From IMG/VR virus record IMGVR_UViG_3300042516_005475, positions 166,048-230,047 of that record: a DNA stretch of 64,000 nt; one strand, written 5' to 3'. This document shows, piece after piece, positions 1,892 to 63,397 of this stretch. The notes under the pieces were generated by a model, which made no database searches, had not been told where the DNA came from, and saw nothing but the letters and a program-made list of their open reading frames with translations. Numbering within the stretch: position 1 is the stretch's first letter; every line of letters starts with the position of its first letter. The position numbers were made by a program, and so were the translations under genes.

Positions 1892-3988
1892 GTGAAGTTT
1901 CAAGATTATCTCATTGAGTCCTGGAAAGATTATAAAGTAAGTAACAGCCCCAAAGTACTTTTGTACGACTTTTACTTGCTTAGTTATCTTTCCTCTCTTA
2001 TTTTAGATCCAGGTACCAGAAAAGATGTTGGTTTAACAGGTGTTGGTTATTCTGGTAAATTCTTTGGAAGAGAAGGTAAAGAGCTCGATGAAGATATTCA
2101 AAACGCACAGAGAAAGCTATTACCATTCTTAGGTAACAAGCTATCTCAGGCTTTATTTTTAGCCGTTTGCGCAGAGCTACGCCATGTATTAGATAGAAAT
2201 CAACAATGGAGTGAGTTTAAGCATACAAAGAACAAAACATTTAGAAACTATATAAGAAACTTAGAGTTCATGAATAATAAAGAACTCAAAGATTTCCAAT
2301 CTAAAAGAAACATAGAAAATCCAAGATTACAGGTTCAAAGCCAAGGTTATAAAACATCTTACCAGGCTGCAAAGAAGTCTATCAAAGAAACAGGTGGCAA
2401 TGTAATTGACTTTGCCAGAATGGCTGCAGACGCCTTTGAAGATTTAAACTGGTCAGCATCATACGGAGGAGATAAGTGGGCTGAAATTGCTAAAGGTTAT
2501 GTAGATTTGCGCCTGGCTCTCAACAATTATAATCCTGAGGCTCCCAGCCCTTCTTCTGAGTCAGCAGAAAGGTTAATTGCTGCTATTGATCATGCATTTG
2601 ATTTAGAGCACAATACTGGTACAGTATTAAACAAAGTAAAGTACTTTGATGTTAAGGGATATGATTGGATTAAGACTGCCTTGGATGATAAGAGAGATGC
2701 TAACATGTATGACATAGCCAAGAAGGCTAGTAGCGACATGAGAAAGCTAGGTCAAGAAGTGTTAAAGGTGGCTGGTATGCAGGATAAGCAGATGAAAAAA
2801 GTACCTGCAGAGGCTGGTATTCCAACAAAGAAAATAAAGCTGGCTGGGTTTACCTCGAAGAAATATGAAGGTGAACATATTAAAGATCTCAGCAGTCTTC
2901 CTATAGGTAGTCTCATAACAGATGATTATAGCGAGTATGTAGCTAAAGTTTTAAATATAAAAAATGCAGAGAAAAAGGTTACGGTTAAATTTATAGCTAT
3001 AAAAAATAAAAATGATGAAAAATGGTTAGGAAAAACTCATAGATATAGTTTTAACTATATTAAAGAAAAATTACACATAGTTAAAAAACAAGATGAGGCT
3101 AATCTCTTAAAAGATTACTTTGTAGATCCTAGTTATAAACCGGAAGTTACTAGCACTTCATCTGCCATAAAAATTGGTGACACAGTAAAAGTTAAGAATA
3201 ATAACATGGAGGGTACTGTAGAATTAATTAATAATGAGGGAGATAATGAAGCACCCTTAGTTCAAATTAAAGTAATTAAAGCTATTCACCCTGAGCTTGT
3301 AGGTATTAAAACCTGGTACCCAGCAGACCATCTTGAGAAGATATCTCCATCAAAGGTAGTTAAGCTACAAGGTTTTGGTAGTAAAAAGCCAGCAAAAAAT
3401 GAGGCATTATTATTTTCAACAGAAATTGAAAGCCCATATATGTTAACTATAGGTTCAATTCTAATTAATATCCATAGTTCTGATCTATATATTGTTCAAA
3501 TGGTTAATGGGCCTGGAAATTATATAAAGATAAAATTAGTTGCATCGAACGACGCTTTGGAGTTTCCTAATTATACTGAACCTGAATTATACAATGGTGC
3601 TACAATTGCGAGAGATTTTAGATTAATAAAAAACAAAGATAAGGAAAGAGCCTTTGCTTCATATGAGTTTATAAAATTATCTTCTGCGAGTAGAGAAGCA
3701 TCTAAGGCTGCCAAGGCAGATGAGCCAGCCCCTAGAGAAAGAGATGAAAATTTAAAAGTTGGTTTTTACTTTGTAATTAATAATGAAACAAACATTGTTC
3801 AAATAACAGCTCTTCCAAGAGGTTATGTTGAATATAAAATAGTAGCAGCTACTAAAAAATATAAAGAGTTGGAAGGTGTTTCTAGCGGTATGCCTAAAGA
3901 TATGTTCATAGATTCAATTGACTTTGCTATTAATCCTAAATCAACTGAATTTAATTACTATATTAGACAATTCAAAAATAAACGTTGA
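1892..3988 (+). CDS. large late protein, putative internal head protein; conserved N-terminal domain plus KOW/SH3-like repeats (paralog of 8767-12267)
   Basis: 698 aa; MKFQDYLIE leader; LYDFY, WSASYGGDKW, IDHAFDLEHNTG shared with 8767; IKIGDTVKVK-type repeats; TAAATA 1881-1886. Confidence 0.65.
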   Translation: MKFQDYLIESWKDYKVSNSPKVLLYDFYLLSYLSSLILDPGTRKDVGLTGVGYSGKFFGREGKELDEDIQNAQRKLLPFLGNKLSQALFLAVCAELRHVLDRNQQWSEFKHTKNKTFRNYIRNLEFMNNKELKDFQSKRNIENPRLQVQSQGYKTSYQAAKKSIKETGGNVIDFARMAADAFEDLNWSASYGGDKWAEIAKGYVDLRLALNNYNPEAPSPSSESAERLIAAIDHAFDLEHNTGTVLNKVKYFDVKGYDWIKTALDDKRDANMYDIAKKASSDMRKLGQEVLKVAGMQDKQMKKVPAEAGIPTKKIKLAGFTSKKYEGEHIKDLSSLPIGSLITDDYSEYVAKVLNIKNAEKKVTVKFIAIKNKNDEKWLGKTHRYSFNYIKEKLHIVKKQDEANLLKDYFVDPSYKPEVTSTSSAIKIGDTVKVKNNNMEGTVELINNEGDNEAPLVQIKVIKAIHPELVGIKTWYPADHLEKISPSKVVKLQGFGSKKPAKNEALLFSTEIESPYMLTIGSILINIHSSDLYIVQMVNGPGNYIKIKLVASNDALEFPNYTEPELYNGATIARDFRLIKNKDKERAFASYEFIKLSSASREASKAAKADEPAPRERDENLKVGFYFVINNETNIVQITALPRGYVEYKIVAATKKYKELEGVSSGMPKDMFIDSIDFAINPKSTEFNYYIRQFKNKR

Positions 3989-20025: not shown

Positions 20026-20865
20026 ATGACCAAGGTAGAACATCAGGAGCTAATTAACAAACTTGCCATGATTGGCTATCATGCTGATGGAGAGGATAAA
20101 GATGCAGTATTCTTAGCCATTGCTGCTTCTTATTCATTACCTTATGAAAAGTTAGATATATTAAAACAGCATGCAGAAGAGGTGGTCAACAATCAAACAC
20201 TCTTGAATGTAGATCTAATTCTTGAAACCATCTAAATTAAAAGTATATCCAGGGTGTAAGATTAAGTTTGATCTAAAACACTCTCCTTACTTAAAGGGTT
20301 TGGGTACAATATTAGAAATTTATACTGGGGTAGGCATACCTTGTATCTATTCTGTTGAGATAGAAGAAGTAGAGGGGCACTACATTTATCAAGCCGGGGA
20401 TAGTATTTTTGTGTTTCAGCACGAAATTGAAAAACTAGTTTATTTTGTTTAACCTTCTTGATTCTTTATTTTCTCTCTATAAAATTATTTTATGAACAAA
20501 TTCGAATACTATTGTTGTTGGCTAGATGTTTTTAATGCTCAATCTCTGCAAGAGTTCCTCGATGAAAAGGGCTCTCAGGGATGGCAAATCGATAGAACTT
20601 TACCAAGTAAAGACCCTAACGATTATAAGACTCTGTTTATATTTAAAAAAGAACTGCGGGAAATAATTGATGTAATTACATGATTAAAGAAGATATTGAA
20701 CAATTAAAGTCTTATAGAGCTATGCTATCTAAGATTAGTGAGGTAGTAGAAGAGTTCTGTGATACAGAAGAAAGTACTACTCTCGATTGTATTTTAGAGA
20801 TGAAGGCTCAGCTTTTCGAGGCAAAGGCTCAGCTTCTCCGCAAAAGAAAAACGATTCAATTCTGA
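20026..20865 (+). other. four small hypothetical ORFs (20026, 20222, 20492, 20680)
   Basis: Closely packed 61-76 aa ORFs after TTGATT/TATAAT promoters. Confidence 0.55.
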
Positions 20866-20930
20866 AGAAAGGCTTGCCGTTCCTGGCAGGAACCTGTATA
20901 CTTTTTGTAGAAAAATTAATAAATAATTGT

Positions 20931-21200
20931 ATGCCTTACAATAACGATTTCAACCGTATTTCTAAGAGCTATACTTCTCTTAAGGAGAACGAGGCTGCAA
21001 TGAAGATGCTGTTTGAGAATTTTGATATTACTGAAGAAGAATTTAAGAATGCTCCTCTTATCTCTACAATTGAAGAAATGAACACGCTGCTAGAAAAGCG
21101 AGGCGATATTTCTTGTAGTGTTTCTATTAACGAGAGCAATGGTAAAGATACATCAGTTGTTACTTTGAAGTACTTGGCACAAGGAGAAGATATTGTATGA
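20931..21200 (+). CDS. hypothetical late protein
   Basis: Start moved to ATG 20931 (TAAATA 20920-20925, 5 nt upstream). Confidence 0.55.
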   Translation: MPYNNDFNRISKSYTSLKENEAAMKMLFENFDITEEEFKNAPLISTIEEMNTLLEKRGDISCSVSINESNGKDTSVVTLKYLAQGEDIV

Positions 21201-21640
21201 GTATTATTTTAGAGGCAGTTAAAGAGAGTATCTCCTTTAATTATAACAAAGGGGATAGAATCACGGTAACTAGTGCTTTCTTAAAAGACAAACGAAAACT
21301 AGATCCAAAGATTAGAGCTGATTTGCAGAGACTACTTCGTACCTGGCAGCGCAGAGGGGGAGTAGATTTTCCTATTTTCGAATTTAAGAACCGTAGAAAG
21401 TTTCCAATGGACTTTGGAGATAGCAGAGGAATAGTTAAATCTTGTATGCCTCAATATGGCATTGAATTGCGTAAGAGAGTACCTCCAGTACATCTTAACG
21501 TGTTTATTACTGAAACTAATCCTATCTTTGGTAACCCAAAGACTCCTAACCCCAAGGGTAAGCTATTCATTTTTGACCGAATTTTCGATAATTACGACAA
21601 ATATAGGAATTATATCTCAGAAAAATACGAAGGCTGCTAA
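21197..21640 (+). CDS. hypothetical protein
   Basis: 147 aa, ATGA-coupled to the upstream gene. Confidence 0.6.
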   Translation: MSIILEAVKESISFNYNKGDRITVTSAFLKDKRKLDPKIRADLQRLLRTWQRRGGVDFPIFEFKNRRKFPMDFGDSRGIVKSCMPQYGIELRKRVPPVHLNVFITETNPIFGNPKTPNPKGKLFIFDRIFDNYDKYRNYISEKYEGC

Positions 21641-21697
21641 CTTTTCCTGTTGCAGTTCCTGTCCGAGGCATCTATACTGAATACAGAAAATAAAATT

Positions 21698-22033
21698 ATG
21701 AACAACGACGAAGTTATTATCCACGGTGAGTGCATGGTGTTTAAGAGCTCCATCCCTCAGAAGGCTAAGAAGATGAAGACTGCTGCTCAGCCTTATGTTA
21801 TTGTGGCACCTAGCGAGACTACTGGTAACCACCACGTGGTCGACCTCAAGCCTGGTGTCGCATTCTACGAGTACGAAGACGTTCTCTTCATGGAGAACGA
21901 AGTCGAGACTACTATTCGCTGCGTGGTTGCTGATCGCCACGACGAGATTACTCTTTCTCCTGGTGTCTATGAGTTCGGCTCTCAGCAGGAGTATGACCCG
22001 TTCACTGCTCGCCTTCAGAAGGTCCGCGACTAA
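21698..22033 (+). CDS. small His-rich beta protein of the type found beside DUF6745
   Basis: IIHGE, SETTGNHHVV, HDEITLSPGVYE..QQEYDP; start moved to ATG 21698. Confidence 0.7.
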   Translation: MNNDEVIIHGECMVFKSSIPQKAKKMKTAAQPYVIVAPSETTGNHHVVDLKPGVAFYEYEDVLFMENEVETTIRCVVADRHDEITLSPGVYEFGSQQEYDPFTARLQKVRD

Positions 22034-37600: not shown

Positions 37601-40600
37601 AAGTTGACAAAATCAAAGAGAGATGTTATAGAATCAAAACTATTCTACAATACAGACTTACCCTACAATACTGTACATTGGCATTTATATCATGAGCTTA
37701 AGACAGGAAATTGAAATGAGAATGTTAGAGAGTAAGCGTAATATGTGTGCTCATTACACATTGAATGCTTTCTCAAATGCTAAGCCTAAAAACAAAATAG
37801 AGCAAAAAATATGGGGAGATAATTCTATTTCTGATCTTATTCAATTGCTAGAATACAATTTACGAGAACATCTATATGACTAAACAAAAAAGACAACCAG
37901 TAAATTTCTCTTGCTTCGATAACCTATACGTGACTTCTGAAAAGTTGTTGCTTAATTCTTTGTATTATACTTTAAATGATAACATTCAAATAAAGCTTTA
38001 TAATAACATATATAATAATTTTAATCGCAATTTAAGGACTCAACTAAAAAATGAAGGCTATCGCTCGTAAATTAACTTTTTTAAATGGGACCCCTTATCG
38101 AGTTAAATGTGGTAAGAAGTTGTTCTATTATTTAGAATTAATATTTCATAAAAAATTAGGACAAGAATCTGTGAGTAGAATTAATGTACAATTAGTAAAT
38201 GAATTACTAAACAATGAAAAGCGTTAAAATTCTAATTATAACTAATGCATTTTTTCATGCTAGTATTAGAAATGCTGTCGTCTCTAAATTAAAAGATGAA
38301 GCTATATCAGATCTAGAAGTTAAAATGTGGACTGACCTATATGGATTAATATGGTCTAATGTTTATGAACCTTTAAGCAGTGAACTCAATAAAAACTGAA
38401 ATAACTAATAAAGTACTTTATCATTGGAGTATAAAGTATAATAAGATTCTCTCATCTGATGCTCTCATTAGTTATTGGAGAAATAATCCATTTGCCTTTG
38501 TTAACGATGCCTTGTTCGTTGGCTTAAATGATAAACAAAATGAAGAAATCTGATAACATCAAGAAACAACTACAAGGGTTTAAAGACACAATCTACAAGG
38601 TCTACTACATGAAACAAACATCTTCTTTCAATAGGTGTATTGACTTATATGGTGAACTCAGCCATAATCTTAACAGCAATTTAACTAATCACACTGAGAG
38701 GCAATTAAAAAATGAAAGAAGAAACGCACATTTTAAAACTGGAAAAAGAGCGCAGAAGGCTCTATACTAGAATAAACAATAGCTGTGGAGTAGTTACAGC
38801 TATGTTGCAAACACCCTTTTATTATAAAGAGCTCTATCAACCAATAGAATTTGCAATGATCATAGAGAATGAATTAGAAAATGAAATCGATTAGACTAAA
38901 AATGATAGTTAAAATGCACTTCAGCAGAGATACTCGAATTAAAATTACTCCTGAAACTGTAGAAAAACTATACAACCCCTTATGGGCTAATCTACAAGTT
39001 AACATCTCACGAAATTTAGCCAATAAATTGATATTCAAAAATATTTTAGAAGACTATGAAAAATAAAGAGGTTCTCCATAAAATGAATGAGCAACGCAAT
39101 TGGGCTATTGGTAGATGCAATCCTATTATTGATAAAATTATTAACCGAGAGATTTTACTAAATAGTTTTGTAGATTTTAGTTTTCAAATGCGGTCGCTTA
39201 ATGTTAATGTAATGAGAGATTTGTTAAATGAAACCTAAAACCCTCAGATTTAAAATACAAGATCAAATCAATGATAGCTTCTGTACTACCCGAACTCTGG
39301 GCAGAAACGATAAGTGGGAAGAATTAGATAGTACTTTGTTATTTTTCTTATATTATGAGTTAGAGCATATTATTCAGCATTCTTTATCAGAGGAGTTAAA
39401 TGAAGCCAAAATATCTTAGACACAAAATAAACGAGAAATTACATGCTCATCGTTTTAGAATCATTTTACATGAGCAAATAATAGATTTGTCTAGGCAAGA
39501 TTTATATAGAAAGTTAGCTAACCCATTGTATGATAATAGCCTTGAGGATACAATAGGGTGGGAATTGAGAAAACAAATAAAGAATGAAATCAAAAAACAT
39601 TAGACAAAAAATACAAGAGAACTTATTTGATCTTCGTTTTAGAATTGCCTTACAAGAGCAAATAATAGACTTGCTTAAAGATCAATTAATTAAAAAGTTA
39701 GCTAATCCATTGTATACTAATAGCCTTGAGGATATAATAGACTCTGAACTTAGAAAACAAATACTGAATGAAGCCAATTAAAACTAGTTTAAACGTACTT
39801 TATCTTTACCATTCATTGACAGAATTGAGTACTATTGTTCGTAACAAGTTATCCAATGAGCTTTATCACCCTTTATTTGTTAATATTGATAGGGGCATTA
39901 GCATGATAAAGAGGAGAGAACTTAAAAAATGAAGCCAATTAAAGATAAACTTAGAGAAAAGCTATTCTATAACTGTTATTATAGATTTAGCAATGAGTAC
40001 TATAAAAAGGTATCGTATGGATGCTATGTTAGGGTGTCAGGCAAACTAAACATTGAACTCAAAGAAAAATGTGATGAGGTAAATTATCAAGTAAGTGAAC
40101 AATTACTCTGGAGCAATGAAAACAAAAAGAAACTTATATTTTAACATATCCAATAAGGCAGTAGTTATGGGTCAAAAATTACACCTCAGTGTGAGTAAAC
40201 AAACTAACTTAGAATACTTTCAACCAGTTGAAGTTAAACTAAATTGTGCTTTGCATAAAAACTTAGAGGCTCAATTGTTCTACGTTATAAAAGACTCATT
40301 AGTTCATCATAAAACAATTTCAACATAAATGAAACCTTTAACTAAAGAAATACATTCAAAATTGATTTGTAAATTAGAAACAAAATTGAATAGACCATAT
40401 TATAGTAACCTAAAAAACGAGCCAAGATGGAAACTACAAAATGCATTTAATGTTGTTTATAATGACCTAGACCAAATAAACAAAAGGTTAGAACACTTCT
40501 GAATGCTTATAATATTATCTATGACTTTAATCACTCATAAAATAATGGAAAGGCTAGTGAGCAAAATGGAAATGAATCTGTATAGAGCCATGTATTACTC

Positions 40601-55356: not shown

Positions 55357-55806
55357 ATGAACGATGAATTAAATCTTACCTGGGCTGATGTTGAACAGGG
55401 TGTAAACATTATTATTAATAGAATCGGTAACAAGAAATATGACTATGTTGTTGGAATTGCAAATGGCGGTCTTATTCCTGCTACATTAATTGCCAAAAGA
55501 CTTAAGCTAAAGACCATGTCAGTTGGATTAGAGTCTTACGAAAATAAAGACTTTAAGAATGTTACTCTCTGGTCTGAAATTAATAAGAGGTTGTATATTT
55601 TACAACAACAAGGCTTATGTTTACTTGTTGACGACATAAGCGACTCTGGCAAATCTTTTAACTATATCAAGAATGCCTACTTGAAAAAAGAAGAAATTAT
55701 TTGCGATACTGCATCTTTAGTTGTAAAGCCAAAGACAACATTCATGCCTGATTATTTTGCAATGAGTGTGCATACTGACACTTGGGTTAAGTTTCCTTGG
55801 GAATAA
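55357..55806 (+). CDS. purine phosphoribosyltransferase (Gpt/Hpt-like)
   Basis: VVGIANGGLIPA, LLVDDISDSGKS, DTWVKFPWE. Confidence 0.88.
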   Translation: MNDELNLTWADVEQGVNIIINRIGNKKYDYVVGIANGGLIPATLIAKRLKLKTMSVGLESYENKDFKNVTLWSEINKRLYILQQQGLCLLVDDISDSGKSFNYIKNAYLKKEEIICDTASLVVKPKTTFMPDYFAMSVHTDTWVKFPWE

Positions 55807-55807
55807 T

Positions 55808-56317
55808 ATGGCCTCACAGAAAGATATTGACAAGGCATACTTGCGTATGTGTGTAGAGTGGGCTAGACTATCTACAGCTCGTCGACGCAAGGTTGGCTGT
55901 CTAATTGTTAAAAGTGGCCAGATAATCTCTGATGGTTATAATGGTACTCCTAAAGGGTTTGATAACAATTGTGAAGAAGAAGTTAATGGAGAGCTAGTAA
56001 CAAAATCAATTGTTCTTCATGCGGAGAGTAACGCCATTACTAAACTAGCTAAATCTAATAATTCTTCTGATGGTGCCACCTTATATGTTACTTGCTCTCC
56101 GTGCTTTGAATGTAGTAAGCTTATTATCCAGGCTGGTATAAAGAGAGTAGTACATTGCCACTTTTATCGAAATACAAGTGGCTTAGTGTTGCTTGATCAA
56201 GCTAATATTGAATGGAGTTTTTATGATCTTAGCTCAGAATTCTCTGCTGACCATTTTCAATCGATATTGCATTCTTCTTCTCGTTCACAGGAGGGTAAGC
56301 AGCAGTTGCAGCAGTAG
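55808..56317 (+). CDS. dCMP deaminase
   Basis: GYNGTPKG, LHAESNAI, YVTCSPCFECSKLIIQAGI; start moved to ATG 55808. Confidence 0.92.
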   Translation: MASQKDIDKAYLRMCVEWARLSTARRRKVGCLIVKSGQIISDGYNGTPKGFDNNCEEEVNGELVTKSIVLHAESNAITKLAKSNNSSDGATLYVTCSPCFECSKLIIQAGIKRVVHCHFYRNTSGLVLLDQANIEWSFYDLSSEFSADHFQSILHSSSRSQEGKQQLQQ

Positions 56318-58700
56318 GCATTGTATTCTCTCTGCCTAATGTTCTTACATCATCTGCAGATGCCATTAATGTTAATGGCAGATTTCTGAATTGATGAGAA
56401 TGTCTTCCAACATTAACTGGAATCTTTTCAGTAAAGTAAAGAGTAAAGTTACAAGGATCTCCACCACAGTTTAACACCCCGCGATAGTTAACATTTGGTA
56501 AAACATATCCCTCTAAGAACACTTCTTCAGTTTCCTGAAACTCAATAGGAGCAGTAATATGCTGTACAGTAAGTTCTCCTTCAACGTGAGCACTTCCAGC
56601 TACTACAATATTTTGGGTAATGCCTAGATTACTATCAACTAATACCTGTTTACCTTGAGATTGTCTTAATACTAATATATCGGATGAGATAGATAGTCTC
56701 TTTTTAGCATTAATATTAACTTCATTATTAGAAGCAATGTTAACTTGTTCTCCAGTTAAGTTTGTAATTGACCCAGCTATATCAACTGGACCATAGGATT
56801 TAAGAGCGACCCCACCTGAACCAACAAGTACATTCCATCTGTTACAAACGTTTAAATTATATGTACCACCTGGCAAGTCTTCTACATTAACATACTCCAT
56901 CATAGGAGATTCTTTTTGACTTATATATACACCTTGAGCAGCAACTATAACCTCGTTGTTGGTTATTTTACCGGTGTTATCATATCTAATATTAGGTAAA
57001 TCGTTCATTACTAATCCAATAGTTTCAAGTTTATGTTTAGTAATTTGAATGATCTTGGATCCACCTAACCCCATTTGTTTCTCTAAGGCTGTAATCTCAT
57101 TAATCTTAGATTCAAACTTTAGCTTTAAAGCATCCTTCTTATCTTCTACTGCCCAAATACCATCTTGAGTTGAAGGAGAAATACCTGTACCGTTACATAC
57201 TGGGCATGGACCACTTCCCAAGAAGTTTCTTGGTTGTGCTGGTGGCTGTATTAATTGAGACGGTACATTGTAATTGTAAACAATAATATTCTGACCTAGA
57301 TAACCAGTAGCTCGTCTTACACTAAAGCTAGAGTCGTTAATCATATTATAAGCAGTTGTCCAATTACCACCCATTGGATTAGTTGCTGTAATAATTGCTG
57401 TGCTATTAACTGGTATATAAAGTGAGAATGTTTCTCTTCTGCTCCATATAGCTGGTCTGTTAGCTGCTGAACAAACAGGGCATTTAGCATATGAACCAGA
57501 TTGGTTTTGTAGAGGGGAGGTATATGGGAACAAATTATTATATGAACCTGTTTGATTGCATCTCTGTATTTCAAATAATTGCTTTACTGCTGCAATTTCT
57601 TCAGCAATATCTTTCCATTGTTGAATAGCTGACTTGTTAAAGTTACCTATCTTTTCAAAATGATCACCTCTAATAATCTCATCATGATCTTTTTCAGTGT
57701 ATTCATTCTTATACCCTCGAGTTGTTTCAAAAGAATCTGCTAGTGTTAAATTTTGTTTGTTTTGAGTGTTAAGTTCAATAGTAGCCTGGTTGTTCATTTC
57801 TCTATATGAACCATTATAGGCTGTCATTCTTATAGCCTCTTTATTGTCAGTATTAACTACTTCTATAGTACCACCCTTTTGGTTTAGCACCATTTTACCT
57901 CTATAGGTTTCAGTATCTGGAGTATAACCCTGAGTATCAGCTGGATTAACATTGTTGTAATCTCCTGGATAGTCTACTGGGTAAGTTTCTAGATTGCCTT
58001 GATAAACACCTAACCAATCCTGAGTACCGTAGTGAGCTGCGAATACAACTGGGTAATTAGCATCACCTTCTCTAAAGAATACCCAAACGTGAGCTCCAAC
58101 ATCAGGAATAGCAAATTGACCTTTAGTACAATTTGAATAGGTGTGTGGTTTATATAAATGAGTATATGGATTGACTCTATTAGGGTTACCTGTAGATATT
58201 ACTCCTGTGTTTGTATTATATGTTTTGCTAAAGGCATCTGATGGTTGTAATTCGTTAATTTCATATATTCTGCCATACTTCTCTCCAGTACCATCAACGT
58301 TAAGAGAGTATTTTGAATTAGCAGATAAAGTTGGTATAGATGTATCAACTCTGTTAGAATCTGATATAGAAGCTTTACTATCCCAATTATAATACTTGCC
58401 AGATGCACCACCGCTAACAACTGGCAAGGCTACTTCAGCCCAAGGTAATAACCTTTTAATTTCCTCATTAACTGAGGTTAGAGAAGATTCAATGTTGTTA
58501 CCCATGAATCTAAAATTCTTATCTGTATTCTCTTGCTTGAAGCTGCTATAAACAGTTTGAGAGATATGAGGCACCCATACCTTTACTCTGCCTCTTTTTT
58601 GAGGATCATTGTTCTGAACAACAATGCCGAGATAATGACCGTAATAATACGGTAGTTGTTTTCTACTGGGGCTACCTTCTAATGCGTTAGAATATCTCAT
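56229..58700 (-). CDS. baseplate hub/spike protein (T4 gp5/VgrG-like)
   Basis: GIVVQNNDPQKRGRVKVWVP, IPDVGAHVWVFFREGDANYPV OB fold; beta-helix repeats; CPVC Zn-finger insert. Confidence 0.75.
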   Translation of the reverse strand: MRYSNALEGSPSRKQLPYYYGHYLGIVVQNNDPQKRGRVKVWVPHISQTVYSSFKQENTDKNFRFMGNNIESSLTSVNEEIKRLLPWAEVALPVVSGGASGKYYNWDSKASISDSNRVDTSIPTLSANSKYSLNVDGTGEKYGRIYEINELQPSDAFSKTYNTNTGVISTGNPNRVNPYTHLYKPHTYSNCTKGQFAIPDVGAHVWVFFREGDANYPVVFAAHYGTQDWLGVYQGNLETYPVDYPGDYNNVNPADTQGYTPDTETYRGKMVLNQKGGTIEVVNTDNKEAIRMTAYNGSYREMNNQATIELNTQNKQNLTLADSFETTRGYKNEYTEKDHDEIIRGDHFEKIGNFNKSAIQQWKDIAEEIAAVKQLFEIQRCNQTGSYNNLFPYTSPLQNQSGSYAKCPVCSAANRPAIWSRRETFSLYIPVNSTAIITATNPMGGNWTTAYNMINDSSFSVRRATGYLGQNIIVYNYNVPSQLIQPPAQPRNFLGSGPCPVCNGTGISPSTQDGIWAVEDKKDALKLKFESKINEITALEKQMGLGGSKIIQITKHKLETIGLVMNDLPNIRYDNTGKITNNEVIVAAQGVYISQKESPMMEYVNVEDLPGGTYNLNVCNRWNVLVGSGGVALKSYGPVDIAGSITNLTGEQVNIASNNEVNINAKKRLSISSDILVLRQSQGKQVLVDSNLGITQNIVVAGSAHVEGELTVQHITAPIEFQETEEVFLEGYVLPNVNYRGVLNCGGDPCNFTLYFTEKIPVNVGRHSHQFRNLPLTLMASADDVRTLGRENTMPTAATAAYPPVNEKKNAISIENGQQRILS

Positions 58701-59962: not shown

Positions 59963-60010
59963 TTAAATTATTTATTTGATTCTCTGAGTTTTGACACTAT
60001 AATGACAGAG

Positions 60011-60835
60011 ATGAATATTAAAGTATCTCATGAAGTACCTATTAAGCTCCTTGATTATTCTCGAAACTTTAACGATTATGACTACTGTCTGGTACACCTA
60101 CTGGATCAGAAACCGGAGTATAAGAAATATTATCAGTCTTGTAAACTCTATGACCGAGAATTGCTCTTGGATAATAGTATTTTCGAGCTTGGTAAGGCTT
60201 TCGATTCTGATAAGTTTGCTGAAAAGGTTGTAGAAATTGAACCTACTTATTACATTGTTCCTGACTCTCTGCAGAACTGTGAAGAGACTATTAGCAATTG
60301 GAAGAGTTTCGTTGCTAAGTATAATGACTTGCCTGGACTTAAAATTGGTGTCGTGCAAGGCAATACCTGGCGAGAACTTAAGTATTGCTATCAGTTCATG
60401 AACGAACATGCTGACTATATTGCAATCTCGTTCGATTATGCGTATTATTTGGTTACTGGAGAGTCTCCTACTAATAACAAGCTCGAGCTCTGGTGCTCTG
60501 GACGTCAACGACTCATTCAGCAACTTATGGATAGTGGCATCTGGAATACAAAGAAGCCTCATCACTTGCTTGGTTGTTCATTGGCTAAGGAGTTTAAGGC
60601 CTATATCGGTCAAACATCTATTCGCTCCGTCGATACTTCGAACCCAGTTGTTGCAGCCTTGCATAATCTCAAGTATAACGGTGATCTTGGATTGAAGACT
60701 AAACCGAGTACCAAGTTGGCTGATCTTATTGACTCTGAAGTTAGCAATGAGCAAATGGATCTTGTTGAGTACAATGTTGGAGCCTTTAAGGAGATCCTTG
60801 GGCGTCCCTCTGATAACTTCCTTCGAAAATTTTAA
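60011..60835 (+). CDS. TGT-fold protein, putative 7-deazaguanine-DNA transglycosylase (DpdA-like)
   Basis: LLLDNS.FELG, IVPD, GVVQG, HHLLGCS, SVDTS; context with QueF; ATG 60002 overlaps the -10 box so 60011 preferred. Confidence 0.65.
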   Translation: MNIKVSHEVPIKLLDYSRNFNDYDYCLVHLLDQKPEYKKYYQSCKLYDRELLLDNSIFELGKAFDSDKFAEKVVEIEPTYYIVPDSLQNCEETISNWKSFVAKYNDLPGLKIGVVQGNTWRELKYCYQFMNEHADYIAISFDYAYYLVTGESPTNNKLELWCSGRQRLIQQLMDSGIWNTKKPHHLLGCSLAKEFKAYIGQTSIRSVDTSNPVVAALHNLKYNGDLGLKTKPSTKLADLIDSEVSNEQMDLVEYNVGAFKEILGRPSDNFLRKF

Positions 60836-60838
60836 ACT

Positions 60839-61768
60839 ATGAAGAAATGGATAGCATTTTTCTCTAAGTCAGGAAGCGAGATTGCTGAATTAAGCAATCG
60901 ATTGGGACGGTGGCCTGATCTCATCGTTACTAATCGTAATGATGTAAATGATTGTAATTTAGCATTAGTTCAATACATTCAGAACAACTTAGATAAGATT
61001 GAATATATTAAGAACGATCCATCTGAATTAGATTATACAAATGCAATAAACTCTTTCTGGAGTACAGATTTGTTTATTACATTGCATGGATACATGCGGA
61101 TCATTCCAAAGAAGATTTGTGAGACTTATGAGATTTATAATGGGCACCCTGGGTTAATTACTAAGTACCCTGAACTCAAAGGTAAAGATCCACAGCGCAA
61201 GGCCTGGCTTGGCGCATATAAGACTTCTGGTTGTGTAATTCATAAGGTTACTGCAGAGGTTGATGATGGTGAGGTTCTTGCTGAAGTTGAAGTTCCAATT
61301 GGTGGGACACTTGATGATACAATTAGCATCTTGCATAAGAACTCTATTGATTTGTGGGAAAATTTCTTGAGAGATAAGCTTATAGAGAAATCTAAAATTA
61401 CAACTGATTATAGAGAACTTGTAAGAAATCATGATTACTCAGTTGAATATTGTGAACATCATTACCCGGAGACTATGCAAGAGCTGAGACGTTTGCAAAA
61501 AGAAGAGTTTCGACTATTCTGTAAAAAGCAGTTTGATTATGGCCCTGGTAATATCTCGGTTGGTCAAGACACAACTACTGCAGATGGTAAGAGAGTTTCT
61601 CTCTGCTCTATCGTCTTTAGATGCAATGATAAAGTTCAGCGTTTGTTAAATCTTGTGGTTAAGAATAATAAGTCTGCTCAGAACGAACCTGTTATGGATG
61701 CTTTCGAGGATCTTTCTCTTTACGGAAAGATTGCAAAAATAGTTGATAAAGGTGTGTGGGGCAAGTAA
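60839..61768 (+). CDS. PurN-like formyltransferase (DpdN-like) fused to a DUF1599-like domain
   Basis: FFSKSGS, LHGYMRII, IYNGHPG, GCVIHKVTAEVDDG; C-terminal KKQFDYG...RCNDK..RL.NL...D.FEDL..YG. Confidence 0.8.
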   Translation: MKKWIAFFSKSGSEIAELSNRLGRWPDLIVTNRNDVNDCNLALVQYIQNNLDKIEYIKNDPSELDYTNAINSFWSTDLFITLHGYMRIIPKKICETYEIYNGHPGLITKYPELKGKDPQRKAWLGAYKTSGCVIHKVTAEVDDGEVLAEVEVPIGGTLDDTISILHKNSIDLWENFLRDKLIEKSKITTDYRELVRNHDYSVEYCEHHYPETMQELRRLQKEEFRLFCKKQFDYGPGNISVGQDTTTADGKRVSLCSIVFRCNDKVQRLLNLVVKNNKSAQNEPVMDAFEDLSLYGKIAKIVDKGVWGK

Positions 61769-61777
61769 AATCAAAGC

Positions 61778-62464
61778 ATGAGAAAGCTGTTTACGTTTAC
61801 TGGCGCTCAGAGTACTGGTAAGACTACTTTGCTTAATAAGGTAAAAGAATTGTATCCTAATCGATTTGAATATGTAACTGAGGTAACTCGTCGTATTCAG
61901 CGATTAGGAGTTTCTATTAATGATAATGCTAAAAACTATGATTTGACTCAGTCTCTTATTATTGGAGATCATTTGATTAACTACATGAAGGTGCATGAGC
62001 AACGTGAAGAGAATGTTACTGATATCTTGCTCGATCGTTGCATTGTAGATGGTTACATTTATACAAAGTACTTTTATGAGCAAGATAAAGTGTCTCGTAC
62101 AGTAATGGACTTTGCTGAATATTGGTTTAAAGAACTAACTCCTAAATATGATGTTATTTTCTATACTAATCCTTCTGATGTTAAACTTGTTGATGACGGG
62201 GTTCGTAGTACTAGTAGTGGTTTTCGAGAAAGAATTATTGAACTCTATAATACAGAATTTATCGATAAATATGATAATATCTGTACGTTAAATGGCTCTG
62301 TTGAAGAACGTATAGAAGTTATGAAAATTGGAATGTTGTATAGTCAATGTAACAACTGCAATATTATGATTGATCTGGATGCTAGCAAGCCCATTCGGAA
62401 GCAAAATAATTATTCAGAATCTGCTGGACAATTGTGTGAAGGCTGCTATAATAATCAAAAATAA
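61778..62464 (+). CDS. P-loop nucleotide kinase-like ATPase (AAA_28/NadR-type) with C-terminal Zn ribbon
   Basis: TFTGAQSTGKTTL, LLDRCIVD, DDGVRS; CNNC...LCEGC. Confidence 0.75.
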   Translation: MRKLFTFTGAQSTGKTTLLNKVKELYPNRFEYVTEVTRRIQRLGVSINDNAKNYDLTQSLIIGDHLINYMKVHEQREENVTDILLDRCIVDGYIYTKYFYEQDKVSRTVMDFAEYWFKELTPKYDVIFYTNPSDVKLVDDGVRSTSSGFRERIIELYNTEFIDKYDNICTLNGSVEERIEVMKIGMLYSQCNNCNIMIDLDASKPIRKQNNYSESAGQLCEGCYNNQK

Positions 62465-62467
62465 ATT

Positions 62468-63358
62468 ATGAGTGACATTACAAAACATCTTGGTAAGACT
62501 AGTGCCTATAAGGCTACTTACGACAAGTCTTTGCTTGTTCGTGAACCTCGTCAACGCAATCGTACCTATCTTGGTATTCAAAACGAGAGTCTTCCGTTCG
62601 TTGGATATGATATCTGGAATGCCTTTGAGGTGTCGACTTTGCTTTCTAATGGGTGCCCTGTTAGTGTAATTGCTAAGGTTACGTATAACTGTGACTCTGA
62701 ATACATTGTTGAGTCAAAGTCTATTAAGCTCTACTTTAACTCCTTTAATATGGAGAAGCGAGCTCATATCAATACTGTTGAAGATGCTATTGAGTTCATC
62801 GAAGAGACTGCTAGTCAAGACCTTTCTGATCTTCTTGAAACTAATGTAATTGTTACTTGCTTTAAGACTAGTCAGTATGTTGTTAATGATAATCTTGCTG
62901 GTTATCCTGTTCTAGAGAATGAGGTGATGTATGGTGTTGACGAAGAGTTTACTAGCTACTCTGAGAATCCTTTGCTCTTGAAGATTAGTGATGTAACTAA
63001 GAAGCCTGTTAAGCAGTACTTTAACTCTAAGCTATTGAAGTCTAACTGTAAGGTTACTAGTCAGCCTGACTGGGGTGATGTGTATATTTACTTGAAGTCT
63101 GATAAGCTTGTTGATAAAACTTCTCTGCTTAAGTATATTGTTTCATTCCGTGATGAGTGTCACTTCCATGAAGAGATTTGTGAAGCTATCTATAAACGAC
63201 TTTGGGATAATTTTGAACCAGAAGAGTTGTTAGTGTTTTGCTTCTATGTTCGTCGTGGTGGTATTGATATTAATCCTATTCGAGCATCGAATATTAATCT
63301 AATCGATAATGATATGATTGATCCGTATTTGCCGTTTATTCGAACTGGCAGACAGTAA
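62468..63358 (+). CDS. queF: NADPH-dependent preQ0 reductase (two-domain type)
   Basis: DIWNAFEVS, VESKSIKLYFNSFN, LKSNCKVTSQPDWG, FHEEICE, RRGGIDINP.R. Confidence 0.95.
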   Translation: MSDITKHLGKTSAYKATYDKSLLVREPRQRNRTYLGIQNESLPFVGYDIWNAFEVSTLLSNGCPVSVIAKVTYNCDSEYIVESKSIKLYFNSFNMEKRAHINTVEDAIEFIEETASQDLSDLLETNVIVTCFKTSQYVVNDNLAGYPVLENEVMYGVDEEFTSYSENPLLLKISDVTKKPVKQYFNSKLLKSNCKVTSQPDWGDVYIYLKSDKLVDKTSLLKYIVSFRDECHFHEEICEAIYKRLWDNFEPEELLVFCFYVRRGGIDINPIRASNINLIDNDMIDPYLPFIRTGRQ

Positions 63359-63360
63359 AC

Positions 63361-63397
63361 AAAGAAAAGGCCGATCTTTCGATCGGCCTTTTTTATT
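63361..63397. terminator. bidirectional intrinsic terminator
   Basis: AAAAGGCCGATC-TTTC-GATCGGCCTTTT between convergent queF and capsid gene. Confidence 0.9.

What the first reader, a model, noticed from the sequence alone, without database searches (positions are those of the whole stretch)
60011..63358. 7-deazaguanine cassette predicting formylated preQ1 in DNA
Seen: TGT-like gene, PurN-like formyltransferase, P-loop kinase and QueF in one operon next to the capsid gene. Known: DpdA exchanges G for preQ0/preQ1 in phage DNA, QueF makes preQ1, and a PurN paralog (DpdN) has been linked to formyl-preQ1 in a phage genome. Inference: hypermodified, restriction-resistant DNA. FolE/QueD/QueE/QueC are not in this window.
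Basis: partly seen in the sequence, partly recalled or inferred. Interest (0 to 1): 0.65.

Follow-up and report, generated by a model that had tools for sequence, protein, structure and literature searches.

The report
Phage formyl-preQ1 DNA modification operon
An uncultured 230-kb T4-like lake phage carries the same gene cassette as the one phage known to replace every guanine in its DNA with formyl-preQ1, so it very probably does the same; it adds an extra fused domain, and a kinase always sits beside the transglycosylase, which nobody has explained.

Summary
Window 60002-63358 (+) holds four tightly packed genes, closed by a hairpin terminator before the convergent gp23 capsid gene. They are a DpdA3-type transglycosylase, a DpdN formyltransferase, a P-loop nucleoside/nucleotide kinase and a bimodular QueF.

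The transglycosylase has no Pfam or NCBIfam hit. Its AlphaFold model matches TGT and DpdA structures (Z 18). Gene order and sequence (45-47% identity for three of the four genes, 28% for the kinase) match Flavobacterium phage immuto, whose DNA has all G replaced by formyl-preQ1 (Cui et al. 2023). FolE, QueD, a divergent QueE and QueC lie elsewhere in the same 230-kb genome, so the pathway is complete.

New details:
- The DpdN here is fused to an Nmad1/DUF1599 domain. Nmad1 accompanies DpdN in 22 of 23 related loci and is absent from immuto.
- The kinase follows DpdA3 in 79 of 80 loci. Related or analogous small P-loop kinases also sit beside DpdA3 in CP220 and phiST, yet the literature never discusses them.
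- More than 540 IMG/VR contigs carry the DpdA3-kinase-QueF core.

No chemistry has been done on this phage, and DpdN and DpdA3 have never been reconstituted. Whether insertion happens on DNA or on nucleotides is open.

The parts
59976..60003 (+). sigma-70-like promoter motif (TTGATT-16-TATAAT) directly upstream of or overlapping the first ATG
   Evidence: Consensus scan, 10 of 12 matches. This is pattern evidence only. The number of such sites in the region is not above the shuffled expectation.
60002..60835 (+). DpdA3-type 7-deazaguanine transglycosylase (277 aa; alternative start at 60011)
   Evidence: No Pfam or NCBIfam hit; phrog_19058 E 2e-60. 46.6% identical to immuto DpdA3 and about 45% to CP220 gp056. 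hhalign to phiST DpdA3: 97.3% probability. AF2 model pLDDT 90.2. The Foldseek top 50 are all TGT (E 1.9e-9). VIA: ArcTGT Z 18.0, DpdA 7ui4 Z 17.8. Family-invariant residues: D57, D88, Q119-G120, H187-H188-L-L-G191, D211-T-S-N-P. No Zn-binding Cys motif.
60839..61393 (+). DpdN formyltransferase domain (aa 1 to about 185 of the 309-aa ORF 60839-61768)
   Evidence: PF00551 E 2.2e-13. 45.3% identical to immuto DpdN YP_010114479.1 over its whole length. In the DpdN clade against PurN, 100/100 support. hhalign to E. coli PurN 97.9%, aligning N101/H103/D142 with N106/H108/D144 and G12-S13-E14 with the PurN G11-S12-N13 loop.
61436..61768 (+). Nmad1 / DUF1599 domain fused to DpdN (aa about 200-309)
   Evidence: 6 of 18 family members hit PF07659, best E 4.7e-6. 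AF2 model pLDDT 89.5, helical bundle. BFVD hits are Nmad1 proteins (best E 4.6e-7, TM 0.84) and the top Atlas row is a PF07659 cluster (TM 0.65). No PDB relative. Accompanies DpdN in 22 of 23 related loci.
61778..62464 (+). P-loop nucleoside/nucleotide kinase (core aa 1-185) with a CxxC...CxxC tail (aa 191-223)
   Evidence: AAA_28 E 1.2e-16 and phrog_2107 E 4.7e-26. The family profile best matches the NadR ribosylnicotinamide-kinase domain 6gye (E 1.9e-5) and thymidylate kinase 2pbr (E 6e-5). Conserved motifs: Walker A, ExTR, TQ, DR and the DDGxRS..FR LID. Follows DpdA3 in 79 of 80 loci. Homologues adjoin DpdA3 in immuto and CP220.
62468..63358 (+). QueF, bimodular NADPH-dependent preQ0 reductase (makes preQ1)
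   Evidence: QueF_N E 1.5e-32 and QueF E 5.7e-22. TIGR03138 251 bits, below the 293 cut-off. Motifs E82-SKSIKLY, C194..QPDWG and H232-FHE are present. 46.3% identical to immuto QueF.
63365..63392 (.). bidirectional intrinsic terminator hairpin between QueF and the convergent capsid gene
   Evidence: 12-bp stem with 6 GC pairs, flanked by an A run and a T run.
55357..55806 (+). Gpt-like xanthine/guanine phosphoribosyltransferase; possible accessory gene (guanine salvage or deazapurine activation)
   Evidence: Pribosyltran E 2.4e-13. NF006613 XPRT 71.5 bits, below cut-off. Homologues are immuto gp211, which lies inside that phage's que cluster, and phiST CGPG_00045. Its link to the cassette is inferred, not shown.

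Best explanation
The operon is the DNA-insertion half of a complete phage pathway that replaces guanine in virion DNA with 7-(formylamino)methyl-7-deazaguanine (fdPreQ1).

The proposed steps are:
1. FolE, QueD, QueE and QueC, encoded 145-210 kb away in the same genome, make preQ0 from GTP.
2. QueF reduces the nitrile of preQ0 to the aminomethyl group of preQ1.
3. The PurN-derived DpdN domain transfers a formyl group, presumably from 10-formyl-tetrahydrofolate, onto that amine.
4. The compact TGT-fold enzyme DpdA3 swaps the deazapurine for guanine. By analogy with TGT, Asp211 would be the ribosyl-attacking nucleophile and Asp57 the general acid/base.

The result would be DNA that most G-recognising restriction enzymes cannot cut.

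What is shown: the identity and fold of each protein, intact catalytic motifs, synteny with the one chemically characterised fdPreQ1 phage, and completeness of the pathway.

What is inferred: that the proteins are active, that the final base is fdPreQ1, that replacement is complete, and the order of the steps.

Following the published proposal, I take base exchange on double-stranded DNA after replication as the more likely insertion route (about 55%). Exchange on a mononucleotide or nucleoside followed by polymerase incorporation is about 40%. The roles of the ever-present kinase and of the fused Nmad1 domain are unresolved.
For: Four-gene operon with 3-9 nt gaps and a terminator.

Same gene order as immuto gp206-gp202, at 46.6%, 45.3%, 28% and 46.3% identity. 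Immuto DNA contains 345,000 fdPreQ1 per 10^6 nt and no dG, and its DpdN is YP_010114479.1 (PMC10516641).

DpdA3: AF2 pLDDT 90.2. All top 50 Foldseek hits are TGT. ArcTGT scores Z 18.0 and DpdA Z 17.8, against 14.2 or less for generic TIM barrels. It matches phiST DpdA3 at 97.3% by hhalign. The invariant acidic and pocket motifs are listed.

DpdN: 100/100 clade with immuto DpdN, excluding E. coli and cyanophage PurN. The N-H-D catalytic residues align with those of PurN.

QueF: motifs intact.

Upstream pathway in the own genome: QueC 154.8 bits, above the 150.3 cut-off. FolE E 7e-48 and QueD E 8e-16 by Pfam, although both are below the NCBIfam equivalog cut-offs (FolE 164 against 181.6; QueD 31.7 against 89.25). 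The QueE-like protein's five best hits are the five QueE models.

The genome has no canonical TGT and no QueA.

The cassette recurs near-identically in 20 lake-water metagenome runs, which suggests a maintained, functional gene set.
Against: - There is no chemical evidence for this phage.
- DpdN's activity is only predicted in the literature, and attempts to reconstitute DpdA3 in E. coli failed (PMC10516641).
- This DpdN is a long form. The reference paper cautioned that longer formylases may do other reactions, and immuto has no Nmad1.
- A class-II glutamine amidotransferase starts 2 nt after the QueC stop and could divert preQ0 towards G+.
- QueE and QueF score below their NCBIfam equivalog cut-offs.
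- Under a purely post-replicative model, the universal kinase has no assigned function.
Confidence: 0.7

Rival explanations
1. Same end product, different route: modification happens in the nucleotide pool before replication. DpdA3 exchanges guanine for the deazapurine on dGMP or deoxyguanosine rather than on DNA. DpdN formylates the aminomethyl group of a phosphorylated substrate, much as PurN formylates the ribonucleotide GAR. The linked kinase phosphorylates the modified nucleoside or nucleotide, and the phage polymerase incorporates it. The Gpt-like PRT recycles the released guanine.
For: - The kinase follows DpdA3 in 79 of 80 loci, and the one exception is at a contig end.
- Among 50,697 phage records, kinase homologues occur only in phages that also have DpdA3: 14 Campylobacter and 4 immuto records.
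- The kinase has small-molecule kinase motifs and best matches the NadR nucleoside-kinase domain and TMPK.
- The three isolates with measured full replacement each pair DpdA3 with a small P-loop kinase and an NTP (pyro)phosphohydrolase: immuto gp203 with the PRA-PH-like gp208, phiST CGPG_00066 (AAA_18) with MazG CGPG_00068, and CP220 gp057 with the HD/AAA_33 protein gp055.
- DpdA3 is compact (277 aa against 413 for DpdA) and has no Zn subdomain.
- DpdN keeps a G-S-E loop that aligns with PurN's G-S-N loop, which from background knowledge binds the substrate phosphate.
- The reference paper reports the ADG nucleoside in CP220-infected cells and failure of DpdA3 alone in E. coli.
Against: - From background knowledge, the characterised TGT and DpdA enzymes act on polynucleotides, although the Cap10 structure among the fold hits (9ntn, with CdnD) suggests the fold can serve other substrates. 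The published view is that all deazaguanine DNA modifications are post-replicative.
- No MazG, PRA-PH or HD hydrolase is found in the window's genome or within 6 kb of DpdA3 in the 80 related loci, so a way to exclude dGTP is missing here.
- A PRT and a kinase can also be explained as purine salvage.
- No interaction or activity data exist.
Confidence: 0.3
2. The cassette modifies DNA, but the final base is not fdPreQ1. It could be plain dPreQ1 if DpdN is inactive or has another substrate, another N-acyl or one-carbon derivative made by the DpdN-Nmad1 fusion, or a mixture that includes dG+ made through the amidotransferase next to QueC.
For: - The Nmad1 fusion is absent from the reference phage.
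- The paper warns about longer formylases.
- A Gat follows QueC, and fused Gat-QueC makes dG+ in phage 9g (PMC6884629).
- 57 of 80 related loci lack DpdN altogether and presumably stop at dPreQ1.
Against: - The DpdN domain is an orthologue-level match to immuto DpdN with its catalytic residues intact.
- Long and short forms interleave in the tree, so the fusion does not mark a separate enzyme lineage.
- The QueC here is canonical and not fused to the Gat. Homologous Gat genes lie beside QueC in nt-1, whose DNA has only traces of dG+.
Confidence: 0.2
3. The TGT-like enzyme and QueF serve tRNA queuosine modification, boosting translation, and do not modify DNA.
For: The fold is shared with tRNA-guanine transglycosylases, and QueF is a queuosine-pathway enzyme.
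Against: - The protein belongs to the DpdA3 family, whose members occur in three phages with fully substituted DNA.
- It lacks the Zn motif and is about 100 residues shorter than tRNA TGTs.
- It does not match Pfam TGT at all.
- The genome has no QueA and the window has no tRNA genes.
- The family is essentially confined to phages: 4 MAG contigs among 185,579 species genomes.
Confidence: 0.03
4. The formyltransferase is an ordinary PurN auxiliary metabolic gene for purine synthesis, as in cyanophages, and lies next to the que genes by chance.
For: Its Pfam and NCBIfam best hits are PurN-type, and cyanophage PurN genes give weak BLAST hits.
Against: - TIGR00639 PurN scores 52 bits against a cut-off of 150.
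- The domain is separated from E. coli and P-SSM2 PurN by a 100/100 branch.
- It always lies between DpdA3 and the kinase in the 23 loci that have it.
Confidence: 0.03

Closest known systems
[quoted passage not shown] 2023, PMC10516641)
   Same: Same gene order: DpdA3, DpdN, P-loop kinase, QueF. Identities are 45-47% for DpdA3, DpdN and QueF, and 28% for the kinase. FolE, QueD, QueE and QueC are elsewhere in the genome, and a PRT homologue is present. Both are T4-like aquatic myoviruses.
   Different: - DpdN is fused to an Nmad1/DUF1599 domain, which immuto lacks.
- The kinase has an extra CxxC..CxxC tail.
- No PRA-PH/MazG-like gene is present, whereas immuto has gp208.
- QueE is not detectably similar to immuto's by BLAST.
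- A stand-alone Gat follows QueC.
- The capsid is at most 39% identical to any isolate.
- There are no chemical data.
Campylobacter phage CP220 group (Firehammervirus; dADG replaces all G)
   Same: DpdA3 homologue at about 45% identity, immediately followed by the same AAA_28 kinase at 33-35% identity. The cassette also lies among capsid and tail genes.
   Different: No QueF and no DpdN. According to PMC10516641 the pathway stops at CDG/ADG. An HD plus P-loop protein (gp055) lies upstream.
Cellulophaga phage phiST (dDG replaces all G)
   Same: DpdA3 family (hhalign 97.3%). A small P-loop kinase-like gene (AAA_18) adjoins DpdA3. A PRT homologue is present in the genome.
   Different: The kinase belongs to a different Pfam family. 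It has DpdL and MazG in place of QueC, QueF and DpdN. It is a 79-kb siphovirus-type genome.
Bacterial Dpd system (DpdA with the DpdB ATPase; structure 7ui4)
   Same: Same fold: Z 17.8 over 230 aligned residues. It also exchanges guanine in DNA for a 7-deazaguanine.
   Different: bDpdA is 413 aa and modifies less than 0.1% of G (per PMC10516641). The P-loop protein here is a small-molecule-kinase type, not ParB-like. Sequence similarity to bDpdA is undetectable.
T4 hydroxymethylcytosine pathway (dCTPase gp56, dCMP hydroxymethylase gp42, dNMP kinase gp1); background knowledge
   Same: This is the functional analogy behind the pre-replicative rival: a base-modifying enzyme plus a dedicated kinase gives complete replacement.
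   Different: No homology was tested. This genome has no detectable dGTP-clearing hydrolase.

Membership tests
DpdA3 subfamily of DNA guanine transglycosylases | Sequence homology to the founding members (phiST CGPG_00065, CP220 gp056, immuto gp206) | tested here: met
   46.6% identity to immuto, about 45% to CP220 (E 1e-54 to 1e-63), and hhalign 97.3% to phiST.
DpdA3 subfamily of DNA guanine transglycosylases | TGT/DpdA TIM-barrel fold | tested here: met
   AF2 pLDDT 90.2. All top 50 Foldseek hits are TGT. ArcTGT Z 18.0 and DpdA 7ui4 Z 17.8, which is 3-4 Z units above generic TIM barrels.
DpdA3 subfamily of DNA guanine transglycosylases | Catalytic aspartates equivalent to TGT Asp102 and Asp280 | tested here: inconclusive
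   Invariant D57 (LLDNS) and D211 (DTSNP) lie at the C-terminal ends of strands and resemble the TGT motifs. hhalign to E. coli Tgt is weak (probability 1.4%) and its register near D211 is uncertain. No residue-level superposition was available.
DpdA3 subfamily of DNA guanine transglycosylases | Co-encoded 7-deazaguanine synthesis genes | tested here: met
   FolE, QueD, a QueE-like gene and QueC are in the same genome, and QueF is in the operon.
DpdA3 subfamily of DNA guanine transglycosylases | Inserts a 7-deazaguanine into DNA, with complete replacement | not testable with these tools
   Needs LC-MS of virion DNA or an enzyme assay.
DpdN (preQ1/dPreQ1 formyltransferase) | Groups with immuto YP_010114479.1 and not with PurN or other formyltransferases | tested here: met
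   In the maximum-likelihood tree, 38 DpdN-like domains including immuto's form a clade against E. coli and P-SSM2 PurN with 100/100 support. 45.3% identity over the full DpdN length.
DpdN (preQ1/dPreQ1 formyltransferase) | Formyltransferase catalytic Asn-His-Asp | tested here: met
   N101, H103 and D142 are invariant in 35 sequences and align with PurN N106, H108 and D144.
DpdN (preQ1/dPreQ1 formyltransferase) | Co-encoded with DpdA and with FolE through QueF (the criterion used by Cui et al.) | tested here: met
   It lies between DpdA3 and the kinase/QueF, and the whole pathway is present.
DpdN (preQ1/dPreQ1 formyltransferase) | Short single-domain architecture (about 175 aa), as in the four named DpdN proteins | tested here: not met
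   It is 309 aa with a C-terminal Nmad1 domain. Long and short forms interleave in the tree, so this is a variant architecture and not a different enzyme family.
DpdN (preQ1/dPreQ1 formyltransferase) | Formylates preQ1 or dPreQ1 | not testable with these tools
   This is unproven even for immuto DpdN.
QueF, bimodular (type II) nitrile reductase | QueF_N and QueF domains, the NADPH motif E(S/L)K(S/A)hK(L/Y)(Y/F/W), and the catalytic Cys in C..QPDWG | tested here: met
   Pfam E 1.5e-32 and 5.7e-22. E82-SKSIKLY and C194 are present. The TIGR03138 score of 251 is below the equivalog cut-off of 293. The motif definitions come from background knowledge.
Nmad1 / DUF1599 (PF07659) | Match to the family by sequence and by fold | tested here: met
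   The window's own copy is below the Pfam threshold, but 6 of 18 orthologous domains match (best E 4.7e-6). The BFVD and Atlas fold searches return Nmad1 proteins.
MazG-like all-alpha NTP pyrophosphohydrolases (considered for the Nmad1 domain) | Detectable profile or fold similarity to MazG or PRA-PH proteins | tested here: not met
   hhalign to phiST MazG and to immuto PRA-PH gives probability 0.2%. PDB fold searches are not significant: Foldseek best E 1.7 and VIA Z 7.2 or less.
Nucleoside/nucleotide kinases (NadR-RNK / TMPK-like, Pfam AAA_28) | Walker A, a DR motif and an Arg-rich LID, with full-length similarity to solved kinases | tested here: met
   AAA_28 E 1.2e-16. Profile against PDB: 6gye NadR-RNK E 1.9e-5 and 2pbr TMPK E 6e-5. 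The motifs are conserved in 25-27 sequences. The substrate is unknown. It is not a dTMP kinase by score: TIGR00041 gives 18 bits against a cut-off of 83.

The most novel reading that the evidence does not exclude
DpdA3-type systems, the only deazaguanine systems that replace every G, may not be post-replicative as published. They may be a nucleotide-pool pathway. In that reading, the compact TGT-fold enzyme exchanges the base on dGMP or deoxyguanosine. The invariably linked NadR/TMPK-like kinase (and, where present, DpdN-Nmad1) process the free modified nucleotide, and the polymerase then writes it into DNA. The kinase would then be an overlooked essential component, and its absence would explain why DpdA3 has never worked alone in E. 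coli.
Probability: 0.3. Interest if true: 0.8.

Novelty: new variant of a known kind. Interest (0 to 1): 0.5.

Why it matters
If the prediction holds, fdPreQ1, so far known from a single Baltic Flavobacterium phage, is used by a persistent population of large T4-like phages in lakes. The underlying DpdA3-kinase-QueF core is common in aquatic viromes: more than 540 IMG/VR contigs and more than 4,000 protein clusters. About a quarter of the sampled loci carry the formylation add-on.

Fully G-substituted DNA resists restriction. It can also bias sequencing and host-defence studies.

The survey points to two unstudied parts, the constant kinase and the Nmad1 partner of DpdN. These give concrete, cheap experiments on an open question: how complete replacement of guanine is achieved, and why DpdA3 has resisted reconstitution.

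Tried and rejected
- **Sequence detection of TGT in ORF1.** Pfam, NCBIfam, phmmer and a 47-sequence profile against PDB sequences gave nothing. hhalign against E. coli Tgt gave 1.4% probability. Only structure worked.
- **Nmad1 as a MazG-like hydrolase.** hhalign to phiST MazG and to immuto PRA-PH found nothing. PDB fold searches were not significant. The 2p06 row (Z 6.2) is a lead only.
- **Nucleotide-pool enzymes in this lineage.** MazG, PRA-PH, HD and IMPDH/GMP-reductase families were not found in the window's genome. tblastn with immuto gp208, phiST MazG, CP220 gp055 and phiST CGPG_00066 found nothing in the genome or the 80 loci.
- **Complex prediction of DpdA3 with the kinase.** No verdict (score 0.00). 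This is evidence neither for nor against binding.
- **Host inference.** Cellular genomes gave only 4 MAG contigs of unrelated taxa. The window has no tRNA genes.
- **Nucleotide-level similarity to known phages.** One 145-bp QueF match only.
- **Literature.** Nothing was found on a kinase, PRT or MazG role with DpdA3, or on Nmad1 or DUF1599 function. The paper I recall as defining the Nmad domains was not held under the id I tried.
- **Read laying was not used.** All 20 runs that hold the sequence are kept as contigs, which cannot reveal base modification.

Full report
**What is there.** The window is the last 64 kb (166048-230047) of a 230,047-bp IMG/VR virus record that CheckV rates complete. 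At 60002-63358 four + strand ORFs follow one another with gaps of 3, 9 and 3 nt. Upstream lies a divergent block of structural genes, including a VgrG-like baseplate hub at 56229-58700. Downstream, a 12-bp GC-rich hairpin flanked by A and T runs (63365-63392) separates the QueF stop from the convergent Gp23 major capsid gene. A sigma-70-like motif lies at 59976-60003. Either start is possible.

**ORF1, the 'TGT-like' gene.** No Pfam or NCBIfam model, no PDB sequence and not even a 47-sequence profile detects a TGT. Only PHROG 19058 (unknown function) matches.

By tblastn the protein is 45-47% identical to the protein annotated DpdA in Flavobacterium phage immuto and to 'hypothetical proteins' of the CP220-like Campylobacter phages. 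Its family profile matches phiST CGPG_00065 at 97.3% probability. These three are the founding members of the DpdA3 subfamily (PMC10516641).

An AlphaFold2 model (mean pLDDT 90.2) is an eight-stranded alpha/beta barrel. Its 50 best Foldseek PDB hits are all tRNA-guanine transglycosylases (best E 1.9e-9). In an exhaustive VIA-align search, the best chains are:
- archaeosine TGT 1iq8 (Z 18.0, 238 residues aligned);
- the DNA preQ0 insertase DpdA 7ui4 (Z 17.8, 230 residues);
- bacterial TGT, QTRT2 and Cap10, ahead of generic TIM barrels at Z 14.2 or less.

Family-invariant residues include D57 in LLDNS, D88, Q119-G120, HHLLG (187-191) and D211 in DTSNP. They resemble the TGT active-site motifs and lie at the C-terminal ends of strands in the model. 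A residue-level equivalence could not be established, because hhalign to E. coli Tgt is weak. The protein is short (277 aa against 413 for DpdA) and has no CxC or CxxC zinc motif. The genome holds no canonical TGT.

**ORF2, the formyltransferase.** Residues 28-163 match Formyl_trans_N. The first 180 or so residues are 45.3% identical to immuto gp204, YP_010114479.1, the protein that Cui et al. named DpdN.

In a maximum-likelihood tree, 38 DpdN-like domains form one clade separated from E. coli and cyanophage P-SSM2 PurN with 100/100 support. The 38 comprise long and short forms, immuto's DpdN and two copies taken from DpdA3 cassettes.

hhalign to E. coli PurN (97.9%) aligns N101, H103 and D142 with the catalytic N106, H108 and D144. 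It also aligns G12-S13-E14 with the PurN G11-S12-N13 loop, which from background knowledge binds the substrate phosphate.

**The fused domain of ORF2.** The protein is 309 aa, not about 175. Its last 110 or so residues form a separate, strongly conserved helical domain. Six of 18 orthologous copies match PF07659, DUF1599, 'Nucleotide modification associated domain 1' (best E 4.7e-6). A model of the domain (pLDDT 89.5) retrieves Nmad1 proteins from the viral and Atlas structure libraries. It retrieves nothing significant from the PDB. Its function is unknown. I found no support for a MazG-like activity.

**ORF3, the kinase.** It matches AAA_28 and PHROG 'thymidylate kinase'. A profile of 27 homologues best matches the ribosylnicotinamide-kinase domain of NadR (6gye, E 1.9e-5, aligned through the LID) and thymidylate kinase (2pbr, E 6e-5). 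Walker A, ExTR, TQ, DR and an arginine-rich DDGxRS..FR segment are conserved. This is the signature of a small-molecule nucleoside/nucleotide kinase. It is not a dTMP kinase by score. A CxxC..CxxC tail is present only in the window's nearest relatives.

**ORF4, QueF.** Both QueF domains are present, along with the NADPH motif (E82-SKSIKLY), the catalytic Cys194 in the C..QPDWG context and H232. It is 46.3% identical to immuto QueF.

**The rest of the pathway.** In the same genome:
- FolE lies at 21294-21830.
- QueD lies at 20684-21082.
- A 243-aa radical-SAM protein lies beside them. Its five best NCBIfam hits are the five QueE models, though all score below the cut-offs.
- QueC lies at 37607-38263 and scores above the TIGR00364 cut-off.

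FolE and QueD are clear by Pfam but below the NCBIfam equivalog cut-offs. No QueA is present. The phage can therefore make preQ0, then preQ1, on its own.

**Comparison with what is known.** Immuto has the same order: DpdA3, a 50-aa ORF, DpdN, kinase, QueF. Its DNA contains 345,000 fdPreQ1 per 10^6 nucleotides with no dG peak.

Two cautions apply. DpdN's activity is only predicted, and attempts to make DpdA3 work in E. coli failed. The same paper also set 'longer forms of the formylase' aside as probably doing other reactions. The long form here is nevertheless embedded in a DpdA3 cassette and nests among short DpdNs in the tree.

**How widespread it is, and what always travels together.** The DpdA3-like protein has more than 4,000 90%-identity clusters in metagenomes and at least 543 IMG/VR stretches. 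I mapped the window's proteins onto the 80 closest loci. This sample is biased towards close relatives, and four of the loci are 88-100% identical to the window at the DpdA3 protein.
- The kinase follows DpdA3 in 79 of 80 loci. The one exception ends at the contig edge.
- QueF follows in 77 of 80. The three exceptions are also at contig ends.
- 57 loci are simply DpdA3-kinase-QueF, for which dPreQ1 is the predicted product.
- 23 loci have DpdN inserted between DpdA3 and the kinase.
- 22 of those 23 also have Nmad1. It is contiguous with DpdN in 13 loci. In 9 it is separated by about 1 kb, and in 7 of these the intervening gene is a GMP reductase.

Immuto, CP220 and phiST have no Nmad1.

Among 50,697 phage records, kinase homologues occur only in the Campylobacter and immuto phages that also carry DpdA3. 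In phiST the gene next to DpdA3, left as unknown in the paper, is an AAA_18 P-loop kinase-like protein.

The three isolates with measured complete replacement also have an NTP (pyro)phosphohydrolase beside the cluster: immuto gp208 (PRA-PH), phiST MazG and the CP220 gp055 HD domain. None is detectable in the window's genome or in the 80 loci.

A Gpt-like PRT lies 4 kb upstream in the window (55357-55806). It has homologues in immuto, inside that phage's que cluster, and in phiST.

**Mechanism.** The most likely product is fdPreQ1 in DNA, and I put the whole reading at 0.7. For the insertion step I follow the published post-replicative model (about 55%), because the known TGT and DpdA enzymes act on polynucleotides.

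That model leaves the universal kinase without a role. A nucleotide-pool route would explain the kinase, the PRT, the hydrolases in the isolates, the compactness of DpdA3, the PurN-like phosphate loop of DpdN, the free ADG nucleoside reported in CP220 infection, and the failed reconstitutions. In that route DpdA3 acts on dGMP or dG, and the kinase and polymerase follow. Its weak point is that this lineage shows no dGTP-clearing enzyme. A complex prediction for DpdA3 with the kinase gave no verdict.

**Other rivals.**
- A different end product, from the Nmad1 fusion or the amidotransferase that starts 2 nt after QueC, is possible at about 0.2.
- A tRNA role or an ordinary PurN function is very unlikely.

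**Context.** The phage is a deeply divergent T4-like myovirus. Its capsid is at most 39% identical to any isolate, and the nearest are cyanophages and Pseudomonas phage pf16. The host is unknown. The cassette recurs almost unchanged in 20 lake-water metagenome runs.

**Verdict.** This is a variant of a known kind, with two unreported regularities that make an open mechanistic question testable: the DpdN-Nmad1 pairing and the constant kinase.

Noticed in passing
own genome G000:C1 about 38313-38963 and 38960-39694 (locus L002:2207-2857 and 2854-3588): A class-II (Ntn) glutamine amidotransferase with an MCAIFG N-terminus starts 2 nt after the QueC stop and is followed by a family-2 glycosyltransferase. 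Homologous Gat genes lie beside QueC in the Vibrio phages nt-1, KVP40 and VH7D. It may supply ammonia to QueC or open a branch towards G+.
   Followed up: partly
window 55357-55806 and 55766-56317: A Gpt-like xanthine/guanine phosphoribosyltransferase overlaps the start of a dCMP deaminase. PRT homologues occur in immuto (inside its que cluster) and in phiST, the two other DpdA3 phages from aquatic Bacteroidota hosts.
   Followed up: partly
L060, L061, L064, L067, L072, L073, L085 (for example L061:7375-8340): In seven related IMG/VR loci a GMP reductase (NF003966, 331 bits) sits between DpdN and a separate Nmad1 gene. Microcystis phage Mel-JY01 also has an Nmad1-like ORF near a GuaB-like gene and a SAM synthase.
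   Followed up: partly
window 62348-62449 (kinase aa 191-224): A CNNC...CEGC zinc-ribbon-like tail on the kinase, present only in the window's closest relatives (L012, L013).
   Followed up: no
own genome G000:C1:18495-18956 (minus strand): A second kinase of the same type (31% identical to immuto gp203) lies just beside the QueE-QueD-FolE cluster.
   Followed up: no
L094:8782-9261 (phiST CGPG_00066) and L001:8291-8815 (immuto gp208): Two genes next to DpdA3 in the reference phages can be assigned to families. One is left as unknown or hypothetical and the other is annotated only 'hydrolase'. phiST CGPG_00066 is an AAA_18 P-loop kinase-like protein. Immuto gp208 is a PRA-PH (MazG-superfamily) pyrophosphohydrolase.
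   Followed up: yes
window 60002-63358: The cassette is present at 75-100% of sampled 31-mers in 20 lake-water metagenome runs dated 2020-2024, so this phage population is persistent in freshwater.
   Followed up: partly
L090-L093: The only DpdA3 homologues among 185,579 species genomes lie in MAG contigs labelled Pseudoalteromonas, Bacilli, archaeon and Lachnospiraceae. These are probably phage contigs binned by mistake.
   Followed up: no
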